Below the pieces are notes generated by a model. The model ran no database searches and had not been told where the DNA came from. It saw only the letters and a list, made by a program, of their open reading frames with translations. From the IMG/VR virus record IMGVR_UViG_3300033571_009404, positions 124,001 through 188,000 of that record: a stretch of DNA of 64,000 bases. One strand, given 5' to 3'. The position numbers and the translations under genes were made by a program. Shown here piece by piece: positions 5,279 through 62,698 of the stretch; within the stretch, counting starts at the first letter, position 1, and every line of letters begins with the position of its first letter.

Positions 5279-5291
5279 CTGAAAAGTTAAG

Positions 5292-5330
5292 GTCATAAAG
5301 CCCCACTGCCTAGGCAGTGGGGTCTATGAC
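5292..5330. terminator. bidirectional hairpin with GTCATA/TATGAC feet
   Basis: gtcataaagccccactgcctaggcagtggggtctatgac, with a 22-bp perfect palindrome core, between convergent genes. Confidence 0.8.
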
Positions 5331-5331
5331 G

Positions 5332-12626: not shown

Positions 12627-12627
12627 A

Positions 12628-12666
12628 GGCATAAAGCCACGTCCCTAGGGACGTGGCGCTTATGTC
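12628..12666. terminator. bidirectional hairpin with GGCATA/TATGTC feet
   Basis: 22-bp perfect palindrome gccacgtccctagggacgtggc between convergent genes. Confidence 0.8.
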
Positions 12667-12667
12667 C

Positions 12668-18744: not shown

Positions 18745-18757
18745 GTAGTAAAGTAAG

Positions 18758-18796
18758 GTCATAGACCCCACTGCCTAGGCAGTGGGGCTTTATGAC
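18758..18796. terminator. bidirectional hairpin, exact reverse complement of 5292-5330
   Basis: gtcatagaccccactgcctaggcagtggggctttatgac between convergent genes. Confidence 0.8.
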
Positions 18797-18797
18797 G

Positions 18798-23706: not shown

Positions 23707-23725
23707 CCGCAGTAATTGATCTAAC

Positions 23726-23779
23726 GTCATAAATCCCTACCCCTCCCAGTGCATCGGGAAAGGGTAGGGGTCTTATGAC
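23726..23779. terminator. bidirectional hairpin with GTCATA/TATGAC feet
   Basis: Arms ccctaccc / gggtaggg flanked by gtcata and tatgac, between convergent genes. Confidence 0.7.
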
Positions 23780-23780
23780 C

Positions 23781-24632: not shown

Positions 24633-24780
24633 TTCAATACCTTCTCTTGGTATAGTAAGTAAAACTTCTTGATAACTCAAGAAGGCGTTAGAGTGGTGTA
24701 CATAAAAATAAACTGAGAATGTGTATAGTTTGATCCAACCGTTTTTTCAACAACATCTACCATAAATGAGGCAGTAGACG

Positions 24781-26250
24781 ATGTTAACACAACCTTTTGC
24801 TAAGGCTCCTCTCATCATGCCGATGATTAACATCGGCGCACTGCAAGATATTCCGACTGGTAAGTGGGAACGCGGTGCATATGGTGAATACATTCTGAAT
24901 GGTGGCTTAGCTATCATTGAAGGCGTGACTGGCCGTCCGAACATGTTCAAGTCCACCTTCCAACGTTATCGCTCTTTGAGGGCATCTGCTCGTATTCCGC
25001 AATCTGTCGGATCGATCTTCGACACTGAAGTGAACATGCACGAAGGGCACCAGGCGCACTTTGCTGCTGGTATTCCCGAGTTCGAAGGCGAACAAGTGTT
25101 TGACACTGGTCGTTGGGTGATCTCCAACAAAGCGCAATACAGTGGTAACGAGTACTACGCTCTCCAGAAAGAATTCCTGGAAGGTAAGGTCAAGAATGCC
25201 AAGGATCACTCTGTGGTGCTCCCGCTTCTGGATCGTGACAGTGCTCCCATGAAGGTCATCATTCCGTCGTTCTCGAATATGGACTCCATCACTCAGTTTG
25301 ACACTGATGAGATGATGCGTATCCAAAAAGACAACAACATTGATGATTCTTCCGGTAAGGTCATTTATGCCCTCGCTGGTCTGGCTAAGAAGCGTCTCTT
25401 GGACGAAGCACCTCGTCTGATGATTCGTTCGTCGAACTATCTGTCGATGACAGCACACCTGACCAAGAAGATTGAACTGGGTGGTGGTGGACCTGGTAAG
25501 TCGATGTTGCCGGATAAGCAGCTGAAGTTCCTGAAGGGTGATGACGTTATCAAGGGTGCTGGTCCTGGCTTCCTGACACTGACTCACAACCTGTGGTACA
25601 TCTACAACACATCCCCGCTGATCAATCAGGCCGACAAGACTGTGCTGTATCCGAAGAATCGTGATGACGACCTGAATCTGGATACTGACTTAAATGAAGT
25701 CACCATGATCAACCTGCGTGGTAAGTCTGGTGTGTCTGGTCTGCCGGTGCGCGTTATCATCTCGCAGAAGAACGGTGTGATGCCTGAACTGTCGGAGTTC
25801 CGCTACCTGAAGGAAACGGGCAACTACGGCTTTGAAGGTAACAACACAACCTACAACAGTGTCTTCCTGCCGGAAGTCAAGATCATGCGTACGACTATTC
25901 GTTCATTGATTGAAGAGAACCCACTGCTGTGCCGTGCACTGAACATTCAAGCTGAGATGTGTCAGATGGATGAACTGTGGGATGCTGGTATGGGTCCGGA
26001 TGTGCAACAGACACCGAAACAACTGTACGAGACTCTGAAGGCTAAGGGTTATAACTGGGAAGTCCTGCTGAAGACGCGTGGTTGGTATACTTACAACAAC
26101 GATCAACACAAGGTGCCTTTCCTGTCGACCATGGACTTGCTCTGCATGACCCTGCCGGAAGATCATCCTTCGTACTACTTCCCGTTCTGGATGGATCCTG
26201 CAACTAAGGACATCAAGGCCGAATACCGTGAAAAGTACATGACAGAATGA
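24781..26250 (+). CDS. uvsX: UvsX/RecA-like recombinase
   Basis: INIGALQDIPTG, Walker A-like GRPNMFKST and DSITQF; typical of the phiKZ-like UvsX family. Confidence 0.85.
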   Translation: MLTQPFAKAPLIMPMINIGALQDIPTGKWERGAYGEYILNGGLAIIEGVTGRPNMFKSTFQRYRSLRASARIPQSVGSIFDTEVNMHEGHQAHFAAGIPEFEGEQVFDTGRWVISNKAQYSGNEYYALQKEFLEGKVKNAKDHSVVLPLLDRDSAPMKVIIPSFSNMDSITQFDTDEMMRIQKDNNIDDSSGKVIYALAGLAKKRLLDEAPRLMIRSSNYLSMTAHLTKKIELGGGGPGKSMLPDKQLKFLKGDDVIKGAGPGFLTLTHNLWYIYNTSPLINQADKTVLYPKNRDDDLNLDTDLNEVTMINLRGKSGVSGLPVRVIISQKNGVMPELSEFRYLKETGNYGFEGNNTTYNSVFLPEVKIMRTTIRSLIEENPLLCRALNIQAEMCQMDELWDAGMGPDVQQTPKQLYETLKAKGYNWEVLLKTRGWYTYNNDQHKVPFLSTMDLLCMTLPEDHPSYYFPFWMDPATKDIKAEYREKYMTE

Positions 26251-26257
26251 GGTTACA

Positions 26258-26938
26258 ATGACTGAAGTCACAGCAAAACAACTTTCTATTTACACTGGAA
26301 AGAACAATTCACCGGCACGCAATGTGATCGTGGAGCCGATAATCAACTTCACTGGAATGAAGATTGATAGTGAACTCTATCGTGCTGCTAATGCATTGCA
26401 TTGCACGCTGAGATACCATGCCATCAAGGTTAGTGGTTTACGTGATGTGAAGATTCTGGATGTGACTGGTAAAGAAATTCTCCTTGCTGACTTTAGACCA
26501 GTGATGGAATTCGATGAAGTTGAAGGTGAGGCTATCTTCCGTATGTTCGATTACTTCCAACTGCTGAAGGTACGCCAGTTGCGAAAAATCGCAACTGAAC
26601 AGGAAGCCAAGTTTACCTTCGACGTTGTATTCATCGAACCCGATCCCACCCACACAGTTGTGGTACGTGCCTGGAAGATTGCAAATGCCTATATCCGTGA
26701 ACTGGGTGGTCCTGACGGCAAACGTGATCTGACAGCTGCACCTGATTATAAAAGAGTACAGATACGGCTTGATGGTGATTTCTACCGTGATGAAAACACG
26801 ATGAAACAAGCCAAAGAGATTCTTAACGATGTGCGTTTGGTGTCTTCCAATCCACATAGCCGCACGCGGTTCGTTGAGAACATCTCAAAAGACGTAGTTG
26901 TTTCCGGGAAAAGCGATGGCAAAGATGCGGCAAACTGA
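26258..26938 (+). CDS. divergent tail tube protein paralogue
   Basis: Aligns by eye with 59718-60584: 34 identities over an ungapped 87-aa block (EPDPTHT, AW-x-I-x-N, RDLT, NP, FV, IS-x-DV). Confidence 0.85.
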   Translation: MTEVTAKQLSIYTGKNNSPARNVIVEPIINFTGMKIDSELYRAANALHCTLRYHAIKVSGLRDVKILDVTGKEILLADFRPVMEFDEVEGEAIFRMFDYFQLLKVRQLRKIATEQEAKFTFDVVFIEPDPTHTVVVRAWKIANAYIRELGGPDGKRDLTAAPDYKRVQIRLDGDFYRDENTMKQAKEILNDVRLVSSNPHSRTRFVENISKDVVVSGKSDGKDAAN

Positions 26939-27242
26939 AGAAGATCAAAAAGCCCTTGATCTGGGTCTGAGTGTAAACTTGGCCATAGCTTTAAGGAAAC
27001 CCGAGGTTAAGGGCTTGACTACTCCTGTGTATAACACCAACGACACTGTCTTGGATATCCACGGTAAGCGAGTAGGTGTTATCTTCATGTCCCCTAATAC
27101 AGTTGTTAAGAACGACAAAGGTGAATGCCTGTACGGCATTTCCTTTAATACCACTGAAGGTCGTCAAATTCAATATGTCGCACAAGAGACTGTTGAGAAC
27201 GATGACGACTATGCATTGGTTAAATCACATAAACGTCGATAA
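26916..27242 (+). CDS. hypothetical protein
   Basis: ORF overlapping the end of the tube paralogue; the start is uncertain (26916 or 26925). Confidence 0.6.
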   Translation: MAKMRQTEEDQKALDLGLSVNLAIALRKPEVKGLTTPVYNTNDTVLDIHGKRVGVIFMSPNTVVKNDKGECLYGISFNTTEGRQIQYVAQETVENDDDYALVKSHKRR

Positions 27243-27251
27243 GGATACATC

Positions 27252-27725
27252 ATGTTCAATTCCAAAGATCTCGAAGCTGCAGACAGTCTGAAAGTATCTA
27301 TGTTCACACCACCGGAACAAGAAGAAGGTCGTATCGGTGAAGCGGTGATGGACATCTTCGCAGTTAAGTCGAAGTTCAAGTTTAACCTGCATGACATCGT
27401 CATGCATTACAAGGGTGGTACGTATTACATTGTCGGTACTCCTGACGAATACGTGATCGAAGCCACTCGTGAACCAGCTTACGCCTATCTGATGGAAGAT
27501 GGTCGCGTCTGCGTGCGTTCCCAAGCTGAAATGGAATCCAACCTCGAAGGTGGTGAAGTTCCTCGCTTTGCTCGCATCAACCCGCCTGGCATCGGTATCG
27601 TCGATTCGGCATGGATGAATAAGACTCGTGAATGGATTCAAGCCTATCACGAAAAGCTCGCCAAAATGGTCGTTACCGGCGAAGCCAGGACTACCCTCTG
27701 GCTGACATCGAAGCACGCTGCTTAA
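27252..27725 (+). CDS. DUF1653-like domain protein
   Basis: HYKGGTYYIVG...EATREPAYAY...GRVCVRS matches the DUF1653 pattern. Confidence 0.7.
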   Translation: MFNSKDLEAADSLKVSMFTPPEQEEGRIGEAVMDIFAVKSKFKFNLHDIVMHYKGGTYYIVGTPDEYVIEATREPAYAYLMEDGRVCVRSQAEMESNLEGGEVPRFARINPPGIGIVDSAWMNKTREWIQAYHEKLAKMVVTGEARTTLWLTSKHAA

Positions 27726-27770
27726 GAAACTGTCAGAAAACATCGTATATATTTCATGAGGGAAGCTACC

Positions 27771-28118
27771 ATGAAGCTCGAAGATTTCACCCTTGGGGAA
27801 TTAGAACGCCACAACAAGCTAGGTGAGGAAGCTGGGGAAGTGCTCAAGGCAATGATGAAGATGCATAACCACGGTAAACACACTGAAGCAGAAGGTATCG
27901 TCTATGACAACATTGGTGACTTTACCGATGAGATTGGTGACTTCCTCGCCGCTGTAGAAAAGATGATCAATCACGGTGACATCGATTACGTGCGGTTAAT
28001 GCAGCGAGTGGCAAAGAAGGGAGCCACCATTACGAAGTTCTTGAAGCATCAGAACTCCGAACCTGTCTATAACTACTCTCTGACGCTACGTAGCGCTGCG
28101 AGTCTTAAACTGGATTGA
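27771..28118 (+). CDS. MazG-like nucleotide pyrophosphohydrolase
   Basis: KLGEEAGEV...DEIGDFL (EExxE...ExxD) all-alpha NTP-PPase motif; ATG 27771 follows RBS gaggga. Confidence 0.75.
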   Translation: MKLEDFTLGELERHNKLGEEAGEVLKAMMKMHNHGKHTEAEGIVYDNIGDFTDEIGDFLAAVEKMINHGDIDYVRLMQRVAKKGATITKFLKHQNSEPVYNYSLTLRSAASLKLD

Positions 28119-28124
28119 TTTACC

Positions 28125-28469
28125 ATGAATCAAGAAACAACTACTGCCCCACAGGAAGAAGGGGTTCGTCCCTTGGCGGAGATCGTCACCAACATCCTGA
28201 AACAAGAAGGACATCCCAATCCCGAGGGTTGGATGCGATTCTTGGAAAATAATACTGGGAATCTGGATGTTATGCTCGAAGATGCAATGGTGCGCCGCGC
28301 CCTCTCCGCCATGTTAGTGGATGCGTCCGCTAATGGCGATGGTCTGAATACCATTGACGAACGTATGGCTGTTTTGACAACTGCTACCCGTCCTGAATGG
28401 ATCCGTATCTTCCAACTGAGGGTTGCACCATGCGTGGTCAAAAACCAGCTGCCGCTGACCAAGCACTGA
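28125..28469 (+). CDS. hypothetical protein
   Basis: 114-aa ORF within the operon. Confidence 0.65.
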   Translation: MNQETTTAPQEEGVRPLAEIVTNILKQEGHPNPEGWMRFLENNTGNLDVMLEDAMVRRALSAMLVDASANGDGLNTIDERMAVLTTATRPEWIRIFQLRVAPCVVKNQLPLTKH

Positions 28470-28489
28470 TCGATGAAGACGGTGTAGTG

Positions 28490-29032
28490 ATGGACCCTCG
28501 CTGGGTTACTGAATTGCAACGTCTTATCACTGGTGCAGGATTATCTCTGAGTGAACCAATACCGCATGAACTGATCATCGAATTCGATCAACGCATCATC
28601 GTCGCAGGAACCAGATACTTCGAGGACATCGGACTATTTGATTCTCTGATGGATGATGAAGCAGCTCTTTACAAGACTAAGGGCAGCTTCATGTTCATCT
28701 CCGGTGCAGCTAAAACCGGTGCAGATGCTCTGGTGATCGAGTGGTGCAAAAAGCGTGGTTACCCTTATGCCGTCTTCCCAGCTGACTGGGACGCCCATGG
28801 GAAATCCGCAGGATACGTGCGCAATGCTGAGATGGCCAAACATCTCACTAATCTGACCGTCTTCTGGGACGGGAAGTCTAACGGCACTAAACACATGATC
28901 GAATGTGCAGTGGAAAAGGGCGTACGTCCCCACAAGTACATCGTCGATATCCCACCACCGGAAGCCCGTGTACACTCTTATGGTGTCATGAATGCGAAGT
29001 CTGACCCACGTCCGGCTCACAGGGGCTTGTAA
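28490..29032 (+). CDS. SLOG (YspA/DUF2493-like) nucleotide-binding protein
   Basis: IIVAGTR, ISGAAKTGAD, FPADW...GKSAGYVRNAEM and FWDGKSNGT; the likely start is 28490 (track 28397). Confidence 0.8.
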   Translation: MDPRWVTELQRLITGAGLSLSEPIPHELIIEFDQRIIVAGTRYFEDIGLFDSLMDDEAALYKTKGSFMFISGAAKTGADALVIEWCKKRGYPYAVFPADWDAHGKSAGYVRNAEMAKHLTNLTVFWDGKSNGTKHMIECAVEKGVRPHKYIVDIPPPEARVHSYGVMNAKSDPRPAHRGL

Positions 29033-29046
29033 TCAAGGATTAGTCC

Positions 29047-29715
29047 ATGCCTGGTAATCGCGCTGCGGCAATGGCTGAACTGAAGAACGTCGTAGAGAAG
29101 ATCCTGCCTGGGGGTGGGATCTTTGATATGTACCGTAATCGGTTAGAGCCAATGTCTGATGAAGAATTTGAACAATTCATTCATCGTCTTGAAACAGGTG
29201 AAGAACGACTTGCAGTTATCGCTCCTAACTTCAGTAAGGTGCGTCTGGAAGTAGAACGCAATCTGGCGATCGCTAAGGAGTGGGGACACAACTTCTTTGA
29301 ATCGATTCGCATCGAGACTGATGATGATACACCACCTTATTACTCTAACGACAAGTATTTGGTGGTTCTCTTGCCGATCCGTCGGCAGGCACAGCTGTTG
29401 TCTAAAAAGATTTCGGTAGCGGAGGATAGCAACTCCATCGATATCTTCTCAGGCCAAGCTGTAGGTAGTAGTCGTGGTAGTAGCATCTCCTACCCAGAGT
29501 CGCAGATCCTTCGTGCATTAGGCTTGCCTGATAACCAAGAGGAACTGTTAAAGCTGCGTGGTGGTGACGTCGCAGGTAATGCTGCGTTGAATGCATCCAT
29601 CTCTCGTACTGGTGGTGCATCCATGTCCGAAATCCGCAAGCTAGGTACAGAGGTCACATCAACACGTACATTGAGTGTATTGCTCACTTCGATGCACATC
29701 GGCAACACTCTGTAA
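29047..29715 (+). CDS. virion RNA polymerase beta subunit, C-terminal part (phiKZ gp149-like)
   Basis: LPIRRQAQLLSKKISV...SGQ...SSISYPE...LLKLRGGD matches the recalled split beta C-terminal polypeptide. Confidence 0.75.
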   Translation: MPGNRAAAMAELKNVVEKILPGGGIFDMYRNRLEPMSDEEFEQFIHRLETGEERLAVIAPNFSKVRLEVERNLAIAKEWGHNFFESIRIETDDDTPPYYSNDKYLVVLLPIRRQAQLLSKKISVAEDSNSIDIFSGQAVGSSRGSSISYPESQILRALGLPDNQEELLKLRGGDVAGNAALNASISRTGGASMSEIRKLGTEVTSTRTLSVLLTSMHIGNTL

Positions 29716-34730: not shown

Positions 34731-34731
34731 C

Positions 34732-34769
34732 GGCATAGAGCCCAGGGAGAAATCCCTGGGCCTTATGAC
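34732..34769. terminator. bidirectional hairpin with GGCATA/TATGAC feet
   Basis: gcccaggga-gaaa-tccctgggc (GNRA loop) between convergent genes. Confidence 0.75.
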
Positions 34770-34771
34770 CT

Positions 34772-53860: not shown

Positions 53861-54373
53861 ATGACCACCGCAACCAAAGCCAAAGCCGACGCAACCGTCA
53901 AGGAATTCACCGAAGCCGACCTGAAACCGGAAGTCGTCGAACTGGCTGGCAAGATCGGCAAGGAAATCACCCTGTCCAACGACGGCGTGGCCACCGTGCC
54001 CGATGACCTCTACGTCCGCAACATGCCCGAAGGTGTGACGGAAGAATCGGTCCGTGCTCATCAGAAGTACGACACCCAGTTCGTCGCCGCATCGGCCCTG
54101 GCCTTCGGTGAAGCCGCCAACAAGGTCGCCAAGAAGCACAAGGATCTGGCCGAAAGCAGTCTGACCGTCAAGACCGTCGGTCGCGACAACATCGAAGTCA
54201 ACTGGCAGCGTGAGAACACCCGCCCCAATCCGCAAGTCAAGGGCGAGACCATCACCACCTTCGGTCGCACCACCGTGGCCATCAACCAGTTCGCAGATCG
54301 CGGCAGTTCGGGCGACCTGAGCAAGGTTCGCAAGATCATCGCCAATCGTGCCAAGGAATCGTTCGGCAAGTAA
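53861..54373 (+). CDS. hypothetical protein, probably highly expressed
   Basis: Strong RBS aaagga, very high C/G at third codon positions and its own terminator. Confidence 0.85.
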   Translation: MTTATKAKADATVKEFTEADLKPEVVELAGKIGKEITLSNDGVATVPDDLYVRNMPEGVTEESVRAHQKYDTQFVAASALAFGEAANKVAKKHKDLAESSLTVKTVGRDNIEVNWQRENTRPNPQVKGETITTFGRTTVAINQFADRGSSGDLSKVRKIIANRAKESFGK

Positions 54374-54400
54374 GCCGAATACCCACTGCGATCGCTTGTA

Positions 54401-54447
54401 GTCTAAAGAGCCCCGATCCAGTCACATGGGTTGGGGCTCTTTATGAC
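54401..54447 (+). terminator. hairpin with TATGAC foot
   Basis: aaagagccccgatcca / tgggttggggctcttt; two G-U pairs are compatible with a plus-strand RNA. Confidence 0.75.
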
Positions 54448-54482
54448 GATCTTTATTTTTGAATAAAAACAGGAGCTATGTA

Positions 54483-57410: not shown

Positions 57411-57449
57411 CACAACAACCTAGCTTTCTACTTAATGAAAGGAAATACC

Positions 57450-58637
57450 ATGAACGCACAAGTCCTCGATGAAGTCATCACCGATCCCACCAACCCGGCC
57501 TACTTCTCTGAAGAGAACATGAACGCCCGTTTCGCCAAGATGGAAGAGGAACGGAAGATCACCGACAGCATCAACGATCGTTCCAAGCAAGCCAAGGAAC
57601 TGATCGAGTCCTGCTTCTGGCCGCGCATGCATGTCAGGAAATTGCATAGCCTGGTCGACAAGCTGCGTGTGAACTGCTTCGACCATCCCAGCCTGAACAA
57701 CATCGGCGCACTGGAAAAGTATCCCGACTACCACATCAAGGCCAGCCAGACCTTGGACTGGATCATCGCCAGCTGCAAGACCATGCTGGCACAGGGTACC
57801 TTCGATGACGTCGGTGATGATTACGAAGTCATCAAGAAGCGCATCGAAGTCCAGCTGTACCGTGAACGTCGTATCCGTCGCCGCTTTGAGCGTCCCAACA
57901 CGCCTCTGAGCATGATGACGTCGGGCACTCGTATCAAGTACGAGCTGTCCTGTGAAGGTGAGAAAGAAGGTACGATCATGAACGTGGTCCAGAACGGTAT
58001 CAACAGCTACTGCGTTGAACTGATGGAAATCGTTGAAGATCGTTGCTCCCACGAACACCCTGGTCCGGGTGAACACAAGAGCTTCAACCACACCTGGGTC
58101 AGGTCGGTGATCAAGAGCAATCCGGGTCATCTGAAGATCGACGACAGCTGGCAACGTAATGTCCAGCTGTTCCGTCGTGACGTTCCCAAGAAGCGCTTCA
58201 ATGCCAAGGTCAAGAAGATCAAGGCAACGAAGCAACACGAGATGGGTGACAAACGTTGGCGCTATGAAATGCTGCCAAACTACAATGCCACCCACACAAA
58301 GGATGGCATTCCGTTCATTCGTCGCGGTGGCAAGTATCGGATGGATCGTGGTAGCGATCTGATCGCTGCATTGATCTCGAAGTACGAGCCGACTCATGAG
58401 CGTGTGGCCGTGGACGTCCAAAGCCTGATGATTTACCTCCACAGCCGTGGGGTGATGCGGATGGTTGCGGATGGTCGCTTCTGGGAAAGTGTATTCGTGG
58501 TGGACCGTGATCGTCTGGAAAAGGCGATCAAGCAAAACCTGAATCGCTTCAAGCTCACGAAGGAAACTCGTCGTGAAATGGCTCGCCAACACGATGCTGA
58601 AATGGATCGCATCGCGATGGCTGACTGGGAAGACTAA
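57450..58637 (+). CDS. hypothetical protein, possible central SH3/KOW-like barrel
   Basis: ATG 57450 after RBS aaagga; GC3-rich; acidic DWED terminus. Confidence 0.8.
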   Translation: MNAQVLDEVITDPTNPAYFSEENMNARFAKMEEERKITDSINDRSKQAKELIESCFWPRMHVRKLHSLVDKLRVNCFDHPSLNNIGALEKYPDYHIKASQTLDWIIASCKTMLAQGTFDDVGDDYEVIKKRIEVQLYRERRIRRRFERPNTPLSMMTSGTRIKYELSCEGEKEGTIMNVVQNGINSYCVELMEIVEDRCSHEHPGPGEHKSFNHTWVRSVIKSNPGHLKIDDSWQRNVQLFRRDVPKKRFNAKVKKIKATKQHEMGDKRWRYEMLPNYNATHTKDGIPFIRRGGKYRMDRGSDLIAALISKYEPTHERVAVDVQSLMIYLHSRGVMRMVADGRFWESVFVVDRDRLEKAIKQNLNRFKLTKETRREMARQHDAEMDRIAMADWED

Positions 58638-59717: not shown

Positions 59718-60584
59718 TTAGACCGGCAGAGCGGACGAACCCAGAGCTTCCACACCTTCCTTGTACGAACGGGAAGTGCGTGCGACGTCTGCCGAGATCT
59801 GTTGGACGAAGGCAGGACGTTGGTACGGGTTGGCAGCCGACAGGTTGATGCCCGAGAGCATCTCTTGTGCGAATGCATCCACACCAGCGCCGACTTGAGC
59901 AATACCGGTGAATTCCACATCGTGGCTCACGGTTTCCATTGCTTGGGTCAGGTCGCGGTGGCCAGTGATCTGACCAGACGACTTGGGCATCATGTTGGTG
60001 ATGAGCCAGGCTTTGACGACCTTGGTATGGGTCGGGTCCGGTTCCATGAACAGCATGGTCGCCGAGTAACGGTCGGCCAGCATGTCGGTCGGAGCAGAAC
60101 CAGTCAGGGTTGCGATTTCTGCAACCTTGGTTTCCGGATCCATCATCAGCATGCGAATCCAGCCCGACAGGAAGCGAGCAACCGGCATGCCGTACTTTTC
60201 CGACCAGCGGAACGATACGTTGGAGCGGTCACGCTTCACGTCGATGAAGTCTTCGTGTTGTTCACCAGCACCACCAACGGCGGTCTGAGCGAAGTCCACT
60301 TGCAGAGTCTGGTTCAGGCCATCAATAGCCATGGCGTGGAGTTCAACCAGCGAACGCAGCGTACCAACCCAGTACTCAGGGTTGTTGAGTAGCTGGAAGC
60401 CGCTCGGTGCCTCAACTAACATGCAGATGAGGTTACGGCGAACGTACGACTGGTTGTTAATCCACTCAGTCAGGTTGGTACTGTAGCCCATCTGACCACC
60501 CAGCTGGAGATTCACCATGGGGGCATGAACGGACGACGAGTACGCCTGACCCGTGAGCAGGGTATCAGCGAGACGAGTAGGCAT
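59718..60584 (-). CDS. tail tube protein (phiKZ gp30-like)
   Basis: 288 aa directly downstream of the sheath gene; EKYGMPV and EPDPT motifs. Confidence 0.88.
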   Translation of the reverse strand: MPTRLADTLLTGQAYSSSVHAPMVNLQLGGQMGYSTNLTEWINNQSYVRRNLICMLVEAPSGFQLLNNPEYWVGTLRSLVELHAMAIDGLNQTLQVDFAQTAVGGAGEQHEDFIDVKRDRSNVSFRWSEKYGMPVARFLSGWIRMLMMDPETKVAEIATLTGSAPTDMLADRYSATMLFMEPDPTHTKVVKAWLITNMMPKSSGQITGHRDLTQAMETVSHDVEFTGIAQVGAGVDAFAQEMLSGINLSAANPYQRPAFVQQISADVARTSRSYKEGVEALGSSALPV

Positions 60585-60595
60585 GTTGAATTTCC

Positions 60596-62698
60596 TTAAG
60601 CAGCGGCTTGATAATCATCGAGGCGGAAAGCTTCGACGTACAGGGTTTCGATGGTCTTCATGTTCGGACCGTAGACCTTGATGCGCAGCGTCCAGCTGTA
60701 GCCACGATCCTTGTCACCCTGGGTGAAGTAGCAATCCGGCACGACGATGATCACGTCATCGAACTTGCCTTCGCACTGCTCAGTGACGAACTTGTTGACA
60801 CGTTCGATCAGTTGATCGTTGTTCAGCTTAACCGAACCCGAGAAGGTGCGGTGAGCCAGTTCGCCGATCTTCATGACTTCGCAGATCGCGTGAGCGATCA
60901 GTTCAGACTTCAGGATCGAAGTGTCGTCACTGTAGACGGTTTGCAGGGCCGGGAAGTAGAAAGTACGACGATCCGACGGTTCCACCCAGTTCAGACCAAC
61001 ATCCCACTCAGTGTTACGAGTGGTACCCGGTGCATTGGGTACGTTGATGTTCTTGAACAGCGTGACCTTGTTGTTCGGGTCGATATCGTAGATCTGACCA
61101 TTGGTCCACTTACCGTTGGACGCACCCATGTACTTGGCACGCTTCACAGCGATTTCAATCACCAGCGGCAGTTCCTTGGTCCAGGTGTTATCCACCAGAG
61201 TACCCGAACGACCGATGATGGACGCACGGACAGCAGGAGTACCGAAGTATTCCGAATCCGGATAGTTACGCACACGAGCCAGCAGAGACTGGGCGATCGA
61301 TTCTTCTTGCGACAGGTTCAGTACCGGACCAGTGGAGTCATGGCAAGCCAGCGTCAGGAAGGTATCCTTACGGGCAGCAATGAAGCTGATCATGTCATAC
61401 TTGGTAGCCATCGGGAAGCCGGTATCGTACATATCGGAAACCGGATACAGCGCCAGGTTCTGATAATCGTGAGCCGGATCAGCCCAATTGATCACGTCGG
61501 CCGACACCAGAGCAGCGAAGTTATCGTCGCTCATGTCGCCATCCGAACCACCTTGAGCGTACAGGTTCATGCTTTCGCTGAACTTGAACTCTTCATCAGT
61601 AGTTACCTTGATCTGGTAGGTGTGATACGGCGAGTTCTGCGAAGACACGCCACCATACAGGTTGAAGCGATAGGCTTGGTCGGTGTCGCCTGCGACTAAG
61701 TCGGAATAGGCATCGACGTACGGCAGTTCAGCAGCCACGAACAGATCCAGCAGCGTCTTGATGTTGGCATCGTAAGTATGGAACTTACCGAAGTCACCAT
61801 AGACCGGAGGATTGGTCGAGGAAGGATCGATCGACTGGTAAGCGGCCGGGAATACGTCACCCACGTATTGCTGAGCATCCAGATACGGGTTGATGTAGTC
61901 AGGCTTCAGTACGAAGTCAACGGACTGTTCTGCGTTGATGTTGGAAACGAGCTTAGGCGTTGCCATGTCAGTGCTACGCGAGGTAACAGCAATACGGAAC
62001 GGATAGACTTTTTCCTTGGTCAGCAGACGACCATCGATCGGGGTGTTCGACAGCAGCGTCGGAGCGTAGATACGCAGTGCGCTGTTGTTACCCCAGTCAC
62101 CGAAGGACGAGATCTCAGCGTCGTGCAGCGGGTAACGCTTGGACTGAGTACCTGCGGTGGTGTCAACTTGATCACCGTCGATAATGGCGCCCTGACCGAA
62201 GGTCGAGTTACCATCTTCATCGAGGGGGATTTCCACGCCGATGAACTTGACCGAGTAACCAGCCACAGTCGGAGTGGCGGTCGATTTGACCGGATCACCG
62301 TTGACGTCTTTCTTGATCGAGCCGTCAGAATTGCGCTCGTAGTTGTCCAGGGTAGTAGCCAGGACGTCAGCGTAGATACGCACCGTTGCCGTCTTGGCAT
62401 CAGCAGGTTTCAGACGCTTAATGAAGTGCGTGTTGGCTGCAGCCGAAAGCTTGTTGGACAGCACCGTTTGGTGAGTCGCCCACTTTTGGCGCAGGTCAAA
62501 CGAGTCGGATCCATAGACCAGATCGCGGGAGTTACCGACGACCGGGCTTGCAATTTCAGGACCTTTCTTCGTGAAGAGATAAACGAAAGGGAAGTGCTGC
62601 GGACGCACTTCTGGCTCGTAGGCCGGAGTCACGGTACTGCTATCTTTGGTACCCAGATTCCGTACCATCGGTGCCGCGTTGATAAATGGAGACGACAT
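60596..62698 (-). CDS. tail sheath protein (phiKZ gp29-like)
   Basis: 700 aa, highly biased codons; YDTGFP...K, YFGTP-x-x-R and C-terminal DKDRGYSWTL...YGPNMKT motifs. Confidence 0.92.
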   Translation of the reverse strand: MSSPFINAAPMVRNLGTKDSSTVTPAYEPEVRPQHFPFVYLFTKKGPEIASPVVGNSRDLVYGSDSFDLRQKWATHQTVLSNKLSAAANTHFIKRLKPADAKTATVRIYADVLATTLDNYERNSDGSIKKDVNGDPVKSTATPTVAGYSVKFIGVEIPLDEDGNSTFGQGAIIDGDQVDTTAGTQSKRYPLHDAEISSFGDWGNNSALRIYAPTLLSNTPIDGRLLTKEKVYPFRIAVTSRSTDMATPKLVSNINAEQSVDFVLKPDYINPYLDAQQYVGDVFPAAYQSIDPSSTNPPVYGDFGKFHTYDANIKTLLDLFVAAELPYVDAYSDLVAGDTDQAYRFNLYGGVSSQNSPYHTYQIKVTTDEEFKFSESMNLYAQGGSDGDMSDDNFAALVSADVINWADPAHDYQNLALYPVSDMYDTGFPMATKYDMISFIAARKDTFLTLACHDSTGPVLNLSQEESIAQSLLARVRNYPDSEYFGTPAVRASIIGRSGTLVDNTWTKELPLVIEIAVKRAKYMGASNGKWTNGQIYDIDPNNKVTLFKNINVPNAPGTTRNTEWDVGLNWVEPSDRRTFYFPALQTVYSDDTSILKSELIAHAICEVMKIGELAHRTFSGSVKLNNDQLIERVNKFVTEQCEGKFDDVIIVVPDCYFTQGDKDRGYSWTLRIKVYGPNMKTIETLYVEAFRLDDYQAAA

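What the first reader, a model, noticed from the sequence alone, without database searches (positions are those of the whole stretch)
26258..26938. Second, truncated tail-tube paralogue inside a non-structural operon: candidate non-polymerising decoy or cap
Seen: the 226-aa ORF aligns with the tail tube (59718-60584). I count 34/87 identities without gaps from EPDPTHT to IS-x-DV. Further matches are RNVIV vs RNLIC, HAIKVSGL vs HAMAIDGL and EVEGEAIFRMF vs EKYGMPVARFL. It lacks ~29 N-terminal residues, ~13 residues of the long hairpin (around TAVGGAGEQ) and ~12 residues around MMDPETK. It sits 33 kb from the sheath/tube operon, 7 nt after uvsX and upstream of DUF1653, MazG-like and SLOG genes. 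Known: in T4 gp19/Hcp-type tubes the N-terminal arm and long hairpin mediate ring stacking, and defence proteins such as DSR2 sirtuin are activated by tail tube monomers and blocked by phage mimics. Inference: this is a stacking-deficient tube mimic acting as an immune decoy, or else a tube cap or initiator.
Basis: partly seen in the sequence, partly recalled or inferred. Interest (0 to 1): 0.82.

Follow-up and report, generated by a model that had tools for sequence, protein, structure and literature searches.

The report
Arm-less tail-tube paralogue beside UvsX
A jumbo phage carries, far from its tail genes, a second and fast-evolving copy of its tail-tube protein that has lost the arms used to build a tube; it belongs to an undescribed family of such copies whose job is unknown.

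Summary
ORF 26258-26938 (226 aa) is a full-length homologue of the phiKZ-type tail tube at 59718-60584: 34/87 identities exactly as counted, BLASTP E=5e-19, Pfam PF23806. AlphaFold pLDDT is 89.6 and the best PDB matches are jumbo-phage tubes.

It lacks the N-terminal arm, 13-14 residues of the long beta-hairpin and an 11-residue loop. It is not a one-off. About 60 protein clusters (50% identity) share the arm-less architecture and form a group separate from canonical tubes (100/100 split).

In IMG/VR, 54/54 canonical tubes follow a sheath gene. None of 11 arm-less copies does. They lie near UvsX or ThyA/Tmk/Thg1-like genes, always in addition to a real tube.

Three syntenic phages keep the gene after UvsX. 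It is only 27-40% identical between them, while flanking genes are 74-91% identical. One phage fuses it to the neighbouring DUF1653 domain.

PhiKZ, PhiPA3 and Goslar lack it. The initiator and terminator roles belong to other families.

Best reading: a non-polymerising accessory tube-core protein that acts off the virion. The immune-decoy idea is untested and does not fit hairpin-binding sensors. Function remains inferred.

The parts
26258..26938 (+). Arm-less tail-tube paralogue (226 aa; P0001), PF23806 fold without the N-arm or the long hairpin
26244..26260 (+). Translation start region: GAGG Shine-Dalgarno overlapping the UvsX TGA stop, 7-nt spacer, ATG. This implies co-transcription and probably coupled translation with UvsX.
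   Evidence: in L034 the two genes overlap by 4 nt
24781..26250 (+). UvsX-like recombinase (homologue of phiKZ gp152); conserved upstream anchor of the variable island
24633..24780 (.). 148-bp divergent intergenic region upstream of UvsX, the only sizeable non-coding gap before the gene. Presumed promoter region; temporal class not determined.
   Evidence: sequence only; inference
26916..27242 (+). 108-aa ORF overlapping the paralogue's end by 23 nt. Conserved in L034 (37-38% identity), absent from L003. No family match.
27252..27725 (+). DUF1653-like protein (157 aa). Its core is fused to the tube-like domain in the related phage L003 (P0002).
27756..28118 (+). MazG-like NTP pyrophosphohydrolase
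28125..28469 (+). 114-aa conserved hypothetical protein of the island
28430..29032 (+). YAcAr/SLOG-family protein (gene-caller start; the longest ORF starts at 28397)
29047..29715 (+). 222-aa RNA polymerase subunit, homologue of phiKZ gp149, which phage records annotate as a virion structural protein. Conserved downstream anchor of the island.
59718..60584 (-). Canonical tail tube protein (288 aa), with N-arm, PVGGxGE-type long hairpin and C-terminal extension
60596..62698 (-). Tail sheath protein, immediately upstream of the canonical tube

Best explanation
The ORF encodes a real, folded, core-only tail-tube protein. It belongs to an undescribed subfamily of PF23806 that has lost the N-terminal arm and the long beta-hairpin; some members have also lost the C-terminal extension.

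Shown here:
- It is an extra copy beside a normal sheath-linked tube.
- It sits in a variable accessory island between UvsX and the homologue of phiKZ gp149 (an RNA polymerase subunit annotated as a virion protein).
- It starts 7 nt after the UvsX stop.
- It diverges much faster than its neighbours.
- It is confined, as far as sampled, to the FLC9-like lineage of phiKZ-like jumbo phages.

Inferred:
- Without its donor arms it cannot propagate a tube, so it is not a building block of the tail.
- It works in the infected cell as a soluble monomer or ring through the tube-core surfaces it keeps.
- The most likely mechanism is an 'acceptor-only' subunit. It would bind the exposed arms of newly made tube monomers, or bind host or phage factors that recognise the tube core. 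That would cap, chaperone or mask tube protein, for example against tube-sensing immunity or against competing phages.
- Its rapid evolution, copy-number variation and domain fusions fit an arms-race accessory gene better than a core structural part.
For: - Fold and homology.
- Loss of arms: the hairpin is 94-103/108-118 in the tube model and 65-67/74-76 here; residues 1-37 of the tube have no counterpart.
- Literature on these elements as subunit contacts: PMC9700779, PMC13250141, PMC13581612.
- Family: 190 hits in the representative search. About 60 are divergent proteins that start at tube-HMM position 28-42 and score 170 bits or less. They are separated from canonical tubes by a 100/100 branch.
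- Context: 54/54 canonical tubes are sheath-adjacent and 0/11 arm-less copies are. Four contigs hold both kinds.
- Other arm-less copies lie near ThyA, Tmk, Thg1-like, RlaP-like and DUF1653 genes.
- Three syntenic phages keep the gene after UvsX, with 27-40% identity against 74-91% for UvsX and the RNA polymerase subunit.
- It is fused to DUF1653 in P0002. DUF1653 is otherwise fused to cytoplasmic enzymes.
- It is absent after UvsX in FLC9, RP31, PhiPA3 and Goslar. Only FLC9 among 50,697 phage records has extra copies.
- GC3 is 0.44 against 0.67 and 0.66 for tube and sheath.
- The phage's own tube ranks 2nd of 81 canonical tubes by BLAST score. FLC9 gp262's own tube ranks 1st.
Against: - There is no direct evidence on oligomeric state, binding partners, timing of expression or presence in virions.
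- The same operon ends with the gp149 homologue, which phage records annotate as a virion protein, so neighbourhood does not exclude a virion protein.
- Low-copy virion genes in the window also have GC3 of 0.44-0.48.
- The C-terminal extension that links tube layers is mostly retained in this protein, so co-assembly with the real tube is not excluded.
- The only RNA evidence is one 191-nt contig in a wastewater RNA library that may contain DNA.
- There is no match to PADLOC or NCBIfam models.
- DUF1653 is a promiscuous domain, so the fusion may say little.
Confidence: 0.4

Rival explanations
1. It is a minor virion or tail-assembly component: a ring at one end of the tube (cap, adaptor or extra initiator layer), or a tail-assembly factor specific to the FLC9-like lineage.
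For: - Tube-fold paralogues do serve as initiator rings in T4 (gp48/gp54), phiKZ (gp88) and Goslar (gp62).
- The C-terminal extension is retained.
- Structural genes are scattered in jumbo phage genomes, and the operon also holds the gp149 homologue, annotated as a virion protein.
- The model's PDB matches include baseplate and cap entries of contractile systems.
Against: - The initiator and terminator roles are filled by other families in phiKZ and Goslar. gp88 is PF23971, which this protein does not match.
- The gene is absent from phiKZ, PhiPA3, Goslar and RP31 and from the FLC9 UvsX locus.
- It evolves two to three times faster than flanking genes.
- It is never next to sheath or tube genes in 11 loci.
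- It is fused to DUF1653, a domain otherwise found on cytoplasmic enzymes.
Confidence: 0.22
2. It is specifically an immune decoy. A tube look-alike made before or with the real tube would soak up tube-sensing defence proteins (DSR2-like or Avs16-like) without activating them.
For: - Its accessory, patchy and fast-evolving character.
- Tube proteins are known triggers of bacterial sensors (PMC13581612).
- Its similarity is highest to tubes of its own lineage.
Against: - Avs16 contacts the conserved beta-hairpin, which is the piece deleted here.
- The literature searched held no example of a tube-mimic decoy.
- No binding or activity data exist.
- The host and its defence repertoire are unknown because this is a metagenomic phage.
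Confidence: 0.15
3. It is a tube core exapted for an unrelated intracellular job. Examples are a ring or scaffold working with DUF1653, Thg1-like or nucleotide-metabolism proteins, or a component associated with the phage nucleus or replication.
For: - It recurs next to UvsX, ThyA, Tmk, Thg1-like, RlaP-like and DUF1653 genes.
- It is fused to DUF1653.
- Long paralogues carry basic-then-acidic disordered N-terminal extensions.
- Its pI is 7.8 against 5.2 for the tube.
Against: - The ThyA-type loci are syntenic by descent, so their co-occurrences are not independent.
- DUF1653 fuses to many unrelated proteins.
- No catalytic or nucleic-acid-binding motif was found.
Confidence: 0.18
4. It is a decaying duplicate of the tube gene with no function.
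For: Truncations, fast divergence and low GC3.
Against: - The reading frame is intact in three phages that are only 27-40% identical at this gene.
- About 60 clusters all retain the same core motifs (EPDPT, RD, NP).
- The AlphaFold model is confident.
- The ribosome-binding site is good and the gene is tightly coupled to UvsX.
Confidence: 0.05

Closest known systems
phiKZ-type tail tube protein (phiKZ gp30, PDB 9xpf/9xps; phiKp24 gp119, PDB 8bfk; Goslar gp217; Pfam PF23806)
   Same: Same Pfam family and same two-sheet core fold. It shares the EPDPTHT, RDLT and NP motifs. The best structural matches have E=1e-11 to 5e-10 and TM 0.58-0.66.
   Different: - It lacks the N-terminal arm, 13-14 residues of the long hairpin including the PVGGxGE motif, and an 11-residue loop.
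- It is not downstream of a sheath gene.
- It evolves much faster.
- Its pI is 7.8 against 5.2.

Tube initiator proteins (phiKZ gp88, Pfam PF23971; Goslar gp62/gp203; T4 gp48/gp54)
   Same: They are tube-fold paralogues that do not make up the bulk tube.
   Different: - gp88 keeps the E-loop and belongs to another Pfam family.
- gp88 has no sequence similarity to anything in this window.
- It is reported in both structurally characterised chimalliviruses (phiKZ and Goslar).
- This protein has none of those properties.

T6SS Hcp
   Same: Shared tube fold (Foldseek E about 4e-4). Hcp is a precedent for a tube-fold protein that exists as free rings and binds other proteins (the second point is from my own knowledge).
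   Different: There is no detectable sequence relationship. Hcp keeps its hairpin and does polymerise inside a sheath.
Phage inhibitors of tube-sensing defence (e.g. DSAD1 against DSR2) and Avs16-type tube sensing
   Same: Only the theme: tube protein acts as an immune trigger.
   Different: No homology or binding has been shown. The hairpin contacted by Avs16 is missing. DSAD1 is, to my knowledge, not a tube homologue.

Membership tests
PF23806 Phage_TTP_14 (homologous family) | HMM match above the gathering score | tested here: met
   45.1 bits against a cutoff of 27, E=1.1e-11, over residues 120-213. Full-length alignment through relatives.
PF23806 Phage_TTP_14 (homologous family) | Tail-tube core fold | tested here: met
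   AlphaFold pLDDT 89.6. Top PDB matches are 8bfk, 9xps and 9xpf. BFVD matches are tail tube proteins.
Functional tail tube subunit of phiKZ-like phages | N-terminal arm/domain that contacts the neighbour in the same ring | tested here: not met
   Tube residues 1 to about 37 have no counterpart. All roughly 60 divergent relatives start at tube-HMM position 28-42.
Functional tail tube subunit of phiKZ-like phages | Long beta-hairpin with the conserved PVGGxGE turn | tested here: not met
   A 13-14-residue deletion. The strands are 65-67/74-76, against 94-103/108-118 in the tube model.
Functional tail tube subunit of phiKZ-like phages | Long C-terminal extension reaching the next layer | tested here: inconclusive
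   It aligns to tube residue about 273 of 288 in P0001. It is missing in the close relatives P0009 and P0006.
Functional tail tube subunit of phiKZ-like phages | Gene directly downstream of the sheath gene | tested here: not met
   54/54 canonical tubes against 0/11 arm-less copies in IMG/VR loci. In this window the gene lies 33 kb from the sheath.
Functional tail tube subunit of phiKZ-like phages | Polymerises into stacked hexameric rings | not testable with these tools
   Only single-chain prediction was available.
Tube initiator (PF23971 Phage_TTP_15; phiKZ gp88 / Goslar gp62) | Match to PF23971, or sequence similarity to gp88 | tested here: not met
   P0001 matches only PF23806. gp88 matches PF23971 at E=5e-80. 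gp88 has no significant tblastn hit in the window (best E=0.33).
Tube initiator (PF23971 Phage_TTP_15; phiKZ gp88 / Goslar gp62) | Present in all the chimalliviruses checked, as a core virion gene would be | tested here: not met
   Among phage records, extra PF23806 copies were found only in FLC9. There is none after UvsX in PhiPA3, Goslar, RP31 or FLC9.
Tail terminator / cap (phiKZ gp98, Goslar gp51) | Homology to the terminator family | tested here: not met
   phiKZ gp98 has no tblastn hit in the window. P0001 has no family match other than PF23806. No structural comparison was made.
Immune decoy of tube-sensing defence | Carries the epitope bound by the sensor (Avs16: the conserved beta-hairpin) | tested here: not met
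   The hairpin is deleted. The sensor interface is described in PMC13581612.
Immune decoy of tube-sensing defence | Binds or blocks a defence protein | not testable with these tools
   This needs an experiment. There is no PADLOC match either.

The most novel reading that the evidence does not exclude
Arm-less tube paralogues are a lineage-specific, rapidly evolving family of phage counter-measures. They would use an 'acceptor-only' tube core to mask or cap tube protein. That would hide the conserved hairpin of free tube monomers from bacterial tube sensors, or plug the tubes of competing phages. This would be a new class of anti-defence or exclusion protein derived from a structural gene.
Probability: 0.2. 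Interest if true: 0.85.

Novelty: new variant of a known kind. Interest (0 to 1): 0.55.

Why it matters
Tail tube proteins are treated as single-purpose building blocks and as conserved targets of bacterial immune sensors. This finding shows that a lineage of jumbo phages has repeatedly kept, duplicated, fused and rapidly diversified a stripped-down tube core outside the tail module. That points to a second, non-structural use of the fold.

If the family interferes with tube assembly or with tube sensing, it would add a new principle to phage counter-defence or phage-phage competition. If it proves to be a tail part, it marks a structural innovation of the FLC9-like lineage. Either way, one cultured phage (Burkholderia phage FLC9, gp262 and gp258) makes the question testable.

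Tried and rejected
- **Close DNA relatives in cultured phages:** none by megablast.
- **Recent duplicate of this phage's own tube:** not shown. The arm-less group is split from all canonical tubes at 100/100. Attaching that group next to the own-lineage tubes fits as well as the best tree (AU 0.52). A control attachment is 17.9 log-likelihood units worse but is not rejected (AU 0.21). The origin is therefore unresolved.
- **Orthologue of the phiKZ tube initiator gp88:** rejected.
- **Extension domains of fused relatives:** no Pfam match. The N-terminal extensions look disordered.
- **DUF1653 function:** no PDB sequence match. Only one incidental paper mentions it. The atlas shows it fused to many unrelated enzymes.
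- **Timing of expression:** no usable promoter motif was found in the window. Papers on phiKZ, 201phi2-1 and AR9 transcription gave no class for the UvsX operon.
- **RNA evidence:** one 191-nt contig in a wastewater RNA library, not proof of transcription.
- **Defence and annotation libraries:** no hits in PADLOC or NCBIfam.
- A first locus search failed because the 47-sequence alignment was too diverse.
- **Other virion genes in the window:** chimallin, gp87, gp98, gp99 and gp101 homologues were not found. The window covers only about a fifth of the genome, so this says little.

Full report
**1. The observation**

The window is part of a phiKZ-like jumbo phage known only from metagenomes. It has 48% GC and no megablast match in 50,697 phage records. 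The same protein is found on contigs of up to 310 kb from wastewater and biofilm samples.

ORF 26258-26938 (+) encodes 226 aa.

BLASTP gives 36/102 identities, E=5e-19. Pfam PF23806 gives E=1e-11, above its threshold, although only over the C-terminal 94 residues.

Multiple alignments that include relatives carry the homology across the whole length. They place three deletions: about 29 N-terminal residues, 13-14 residues in the hairpin (TAVGGAGEQHEDF) and 11 residues in a later loop.

The gene starts 7 nt after the UvsX stop, with a GAGG overlapping that stop.

**2. Structure**

An AlphaFold model built on 47 relatives is confident (pLDDT 89.6, pTM 0.79). Its best PDB matches are the jumbo-phage tubes: phiKp24 8bfk and phiKZ gp30 9xps/9xpf (E=1e-11 to 5e-10, TM 0.58-0.66). 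Tubes of other contractile systems and Hcp follow. BFVD and the ESM atlas agree.

A model of the window's own tube (pLDDT 91.9) has an N-terminal arm (residues 1-37) and a long hairpin (strands 94-103 and 108-118). The paralogue has no arm and only a stub hairpin (65-67/74-76).

In phiKp24 gp119 and phiKZ gp30, the N-terminal domain and the long antiparallel strands reach neighbouring subunits, and the long C-terminal extension reaches the next layer (PMC9700779; PMC13250141). A survey of bacterial sensors describes the tube hairpin as the ring-stacking interface, and as the surface bound by Avs16 (PMC13581612).

So the deletions do remove subunit-contact elements. The layer-linking C-terminal extension, however, is largely kept here, while two close relatives have lost it.

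**3. It is one of a family**

A profile search of 1.84 billion representative proteins found 190 relatives.

- About 79 are 280-300-aa canonical tubes.
- About 60 are divergent. These are either 200-260 aa long, or carry the tube-like domain with extra N- or C-terminal parts up to 477 aa. They score 170 bits or less against a canonical-tube HMM and begin at HMM position 28-42, so they have no arm. Those I aligned also lack the hairpin insert.

A careful maximum-likelihood tree separates the two groups with 100/100 support.

Where the arm-less group joins the canonical radiation is unresolved. Joining next to the tubes of this phage's own lineage fits as well as the best tree (AU 0.52). A control position is 17.9 log-likelihood units worse but is not rejected.

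Two further hints point to an origin by duplication within the FLC9-like lineage, followed by fast divergence:
- By BLAST score, this phage's own tube ranks 2nd of 81 canonical tubes for this protein. FLC9's tube ranks 1st for FLC9 gp262.
- All four distinct tubes from genomes known to hold a paralogue fall in one 8-member clade (98) of a 50-tube tree.

**4. Genomic context**

In IMG/VR loci, 54 of 54 canonical tubes lie directly after a sheath gene. None of 11 arm-less copies does. Four contigs carry both kinds.

Two locus types recur.

(a) After UvsX. This is seen in the window, in L003 and in L034. The shared order is UvsX, tube-like, a small ORF, DUF1653-like, MazG-like, a small ORF, YAcAr, and a 222-aa RNA polymerase subunit.

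(b) Near ThyA, Tmk, Thg1-like and RlaP-like genes. Here there is often a tandem pair: a short copy and a long copy with a disordered, basic-then-acidic N-terminal extension. The only cultured carrier, Burkholderia phage FLC9 (gp262, gp258), is of this type. These loci are syntenic by descent, so they are not independent.

The interval between UvsX (phiKZ gp152 homologue) and the gp149 homologue is a variable island. It holds two small genes in PhiPA3 and Goslar, three or four genes without a tube-like one in RP31 and FLC9, and six in the window.

Across the three syntenic phages the tube-like gene is 27-40% identical. UvsX is 74-79% identical and the polymerase subunit 77-91%. For comparison, the canonical tubes of the window phage and FLC9 are 57% identical while their UvsX proteins are 47% identical. 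The paralogue is therefore the fast-evolving member of its locus.

**5. The DUF1653 link**

In L003 the tube-like domain is fused to the DUF1653-like domain that is a separate gene in the window and in L034. Unrelated arm-less copies in L016 and L036 have a DUF1653 gene adjacent or within 1.4 kb.

FLC9, however, has the DUF1653-like gene after UvsX without a tube-like gene. DUF1653 is also fused to many unrelated cytoplasmic enzymes in bacteria. The link is suggestive but weak. It mainly argues that the tube-like protein lives in the cytoplasm.

**6. What it is not**

It is not the conserved tube initiator. phiKZ gp88 is PF23971 and has no similarity to the window. Goslar uses gp62 and gp203.

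The terminator is gp98 in phiKZ and gp51 in Goslar.

It has no match in the defence-system or NCBI naming libraries.

**7. What it most likely does**

Shown: it is a folded, conserved, arm-less extra tube core. It is placed immediately after UvsX, is accessory, is restricted to one lineage and evolves fast.

Inferred: it cannot extend a tube and is not a bulk tail part. It acts through the surfaces it keeps, most simply as an acceptor-only partner for the arms of real tube subunits or for tube-binding factors. That would make it a cap, a chaperone or a mask.

An immune role is possible, but nothing here tests it. A decoy for hairpin-binding sensors is excluded by the deletion itself. A minor virion role remains a serious rival, because the operon also encodes the gp149 homologue (annotated as a virion protein) and because the C-terminal extension is kept.

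The expression class could not be determined.

**8. Novelty and verdict**

Literature searches found no description of tail-tube paralogues outside the tail module in jumbo phages, and no tube-mimic decoy.

I rate this a new variant of a known kind: a distinct arm-less subfamily of PF23806 with its own architecture, context and evolutionary tempo, and with unknown function. Interest is moderate to good, and FLC9 offers a way to test it.

Noticed in passing
window 5279-5331, 12627-12667, 18745-18797, 23707-23780, 34731-34771, 54374-54482: Junctions between convergent genes carry GC-rich hairpins flanked by inverted GTCATAAAG...CTTTATGAC arms. These are probably a conserved bidirectional terminator type of this phage.
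   Followed up: no
L033 (FLC9 LC667451 about 201.4-206.9 kb); L023 5704-9921; L038-L041: A recurring module: ThyA, a Thg1-like 3'-5' nucleotidyltransferase, and two arm-less tube paralogues. One is short. The other is long, with a basic-then-acidic disordered N-terminal extension. An RlaP-like gene lies nearby.
   Followed up: partly
window 27252-27725; L012 9570-9860 (FLC9 gp55); L034 1740-2186; P0152-P0167: A phage DUF1653-like protein with a very conserved core (YVIEATREPAYAYLMxDGRxCxRSQxEME). It is found free, or fused to an acyl-carrier domain, a Cys-rich N-terminus, a transmembrane helix or the tube-like domain. Its function is unknown.
   Followed up: partly
window 26251-29046 and the equivalent intervals in L012, L013, L103, L104: The interval between UvsX (phiKZ gp152 homologue) and the RNA polymerase subunit (gp149 homologue) is a variable gene island. 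It holds two to six accessory genes depending on the phage.
   Followed up: partly
window 26258-26300 vs L003 10001-10045: The two orthologues share the first five codons (ATGACTGAAGTCAC) and an N-terminal MTEVT..Q.S.YT peptide, despite 34-40% overall identity. L003 also has a terminator-like hairpin between UvsX and the gene, which the window lacks.
   Followed up: no
window 26916-27242: A 108-aa ORF overlaps the end of the paralogue by 23 nt in another frame. It is conserved in L034 (37-38% identity) but missing in L003, where the flanking genes are fused. It has no family match.
   Followed up: partly
window 53861-54373 and 57435-58637: Two ORFs have unusually high GC3 (0.77 and 0.69), like the tube and sheath (0.67, 0.66). 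This may mark highly expressed late genes. They were not examined further.
   Followed up: no
window 26544-26733: A wastewater RNA-seq library holds a 191-nt contig identical to the inside of the paralogue gene. It also holds pieces of UvsX and the polymerase-subunit gene. The library may contain DNA, so this is not proof of transcription.
   Followed up: partly
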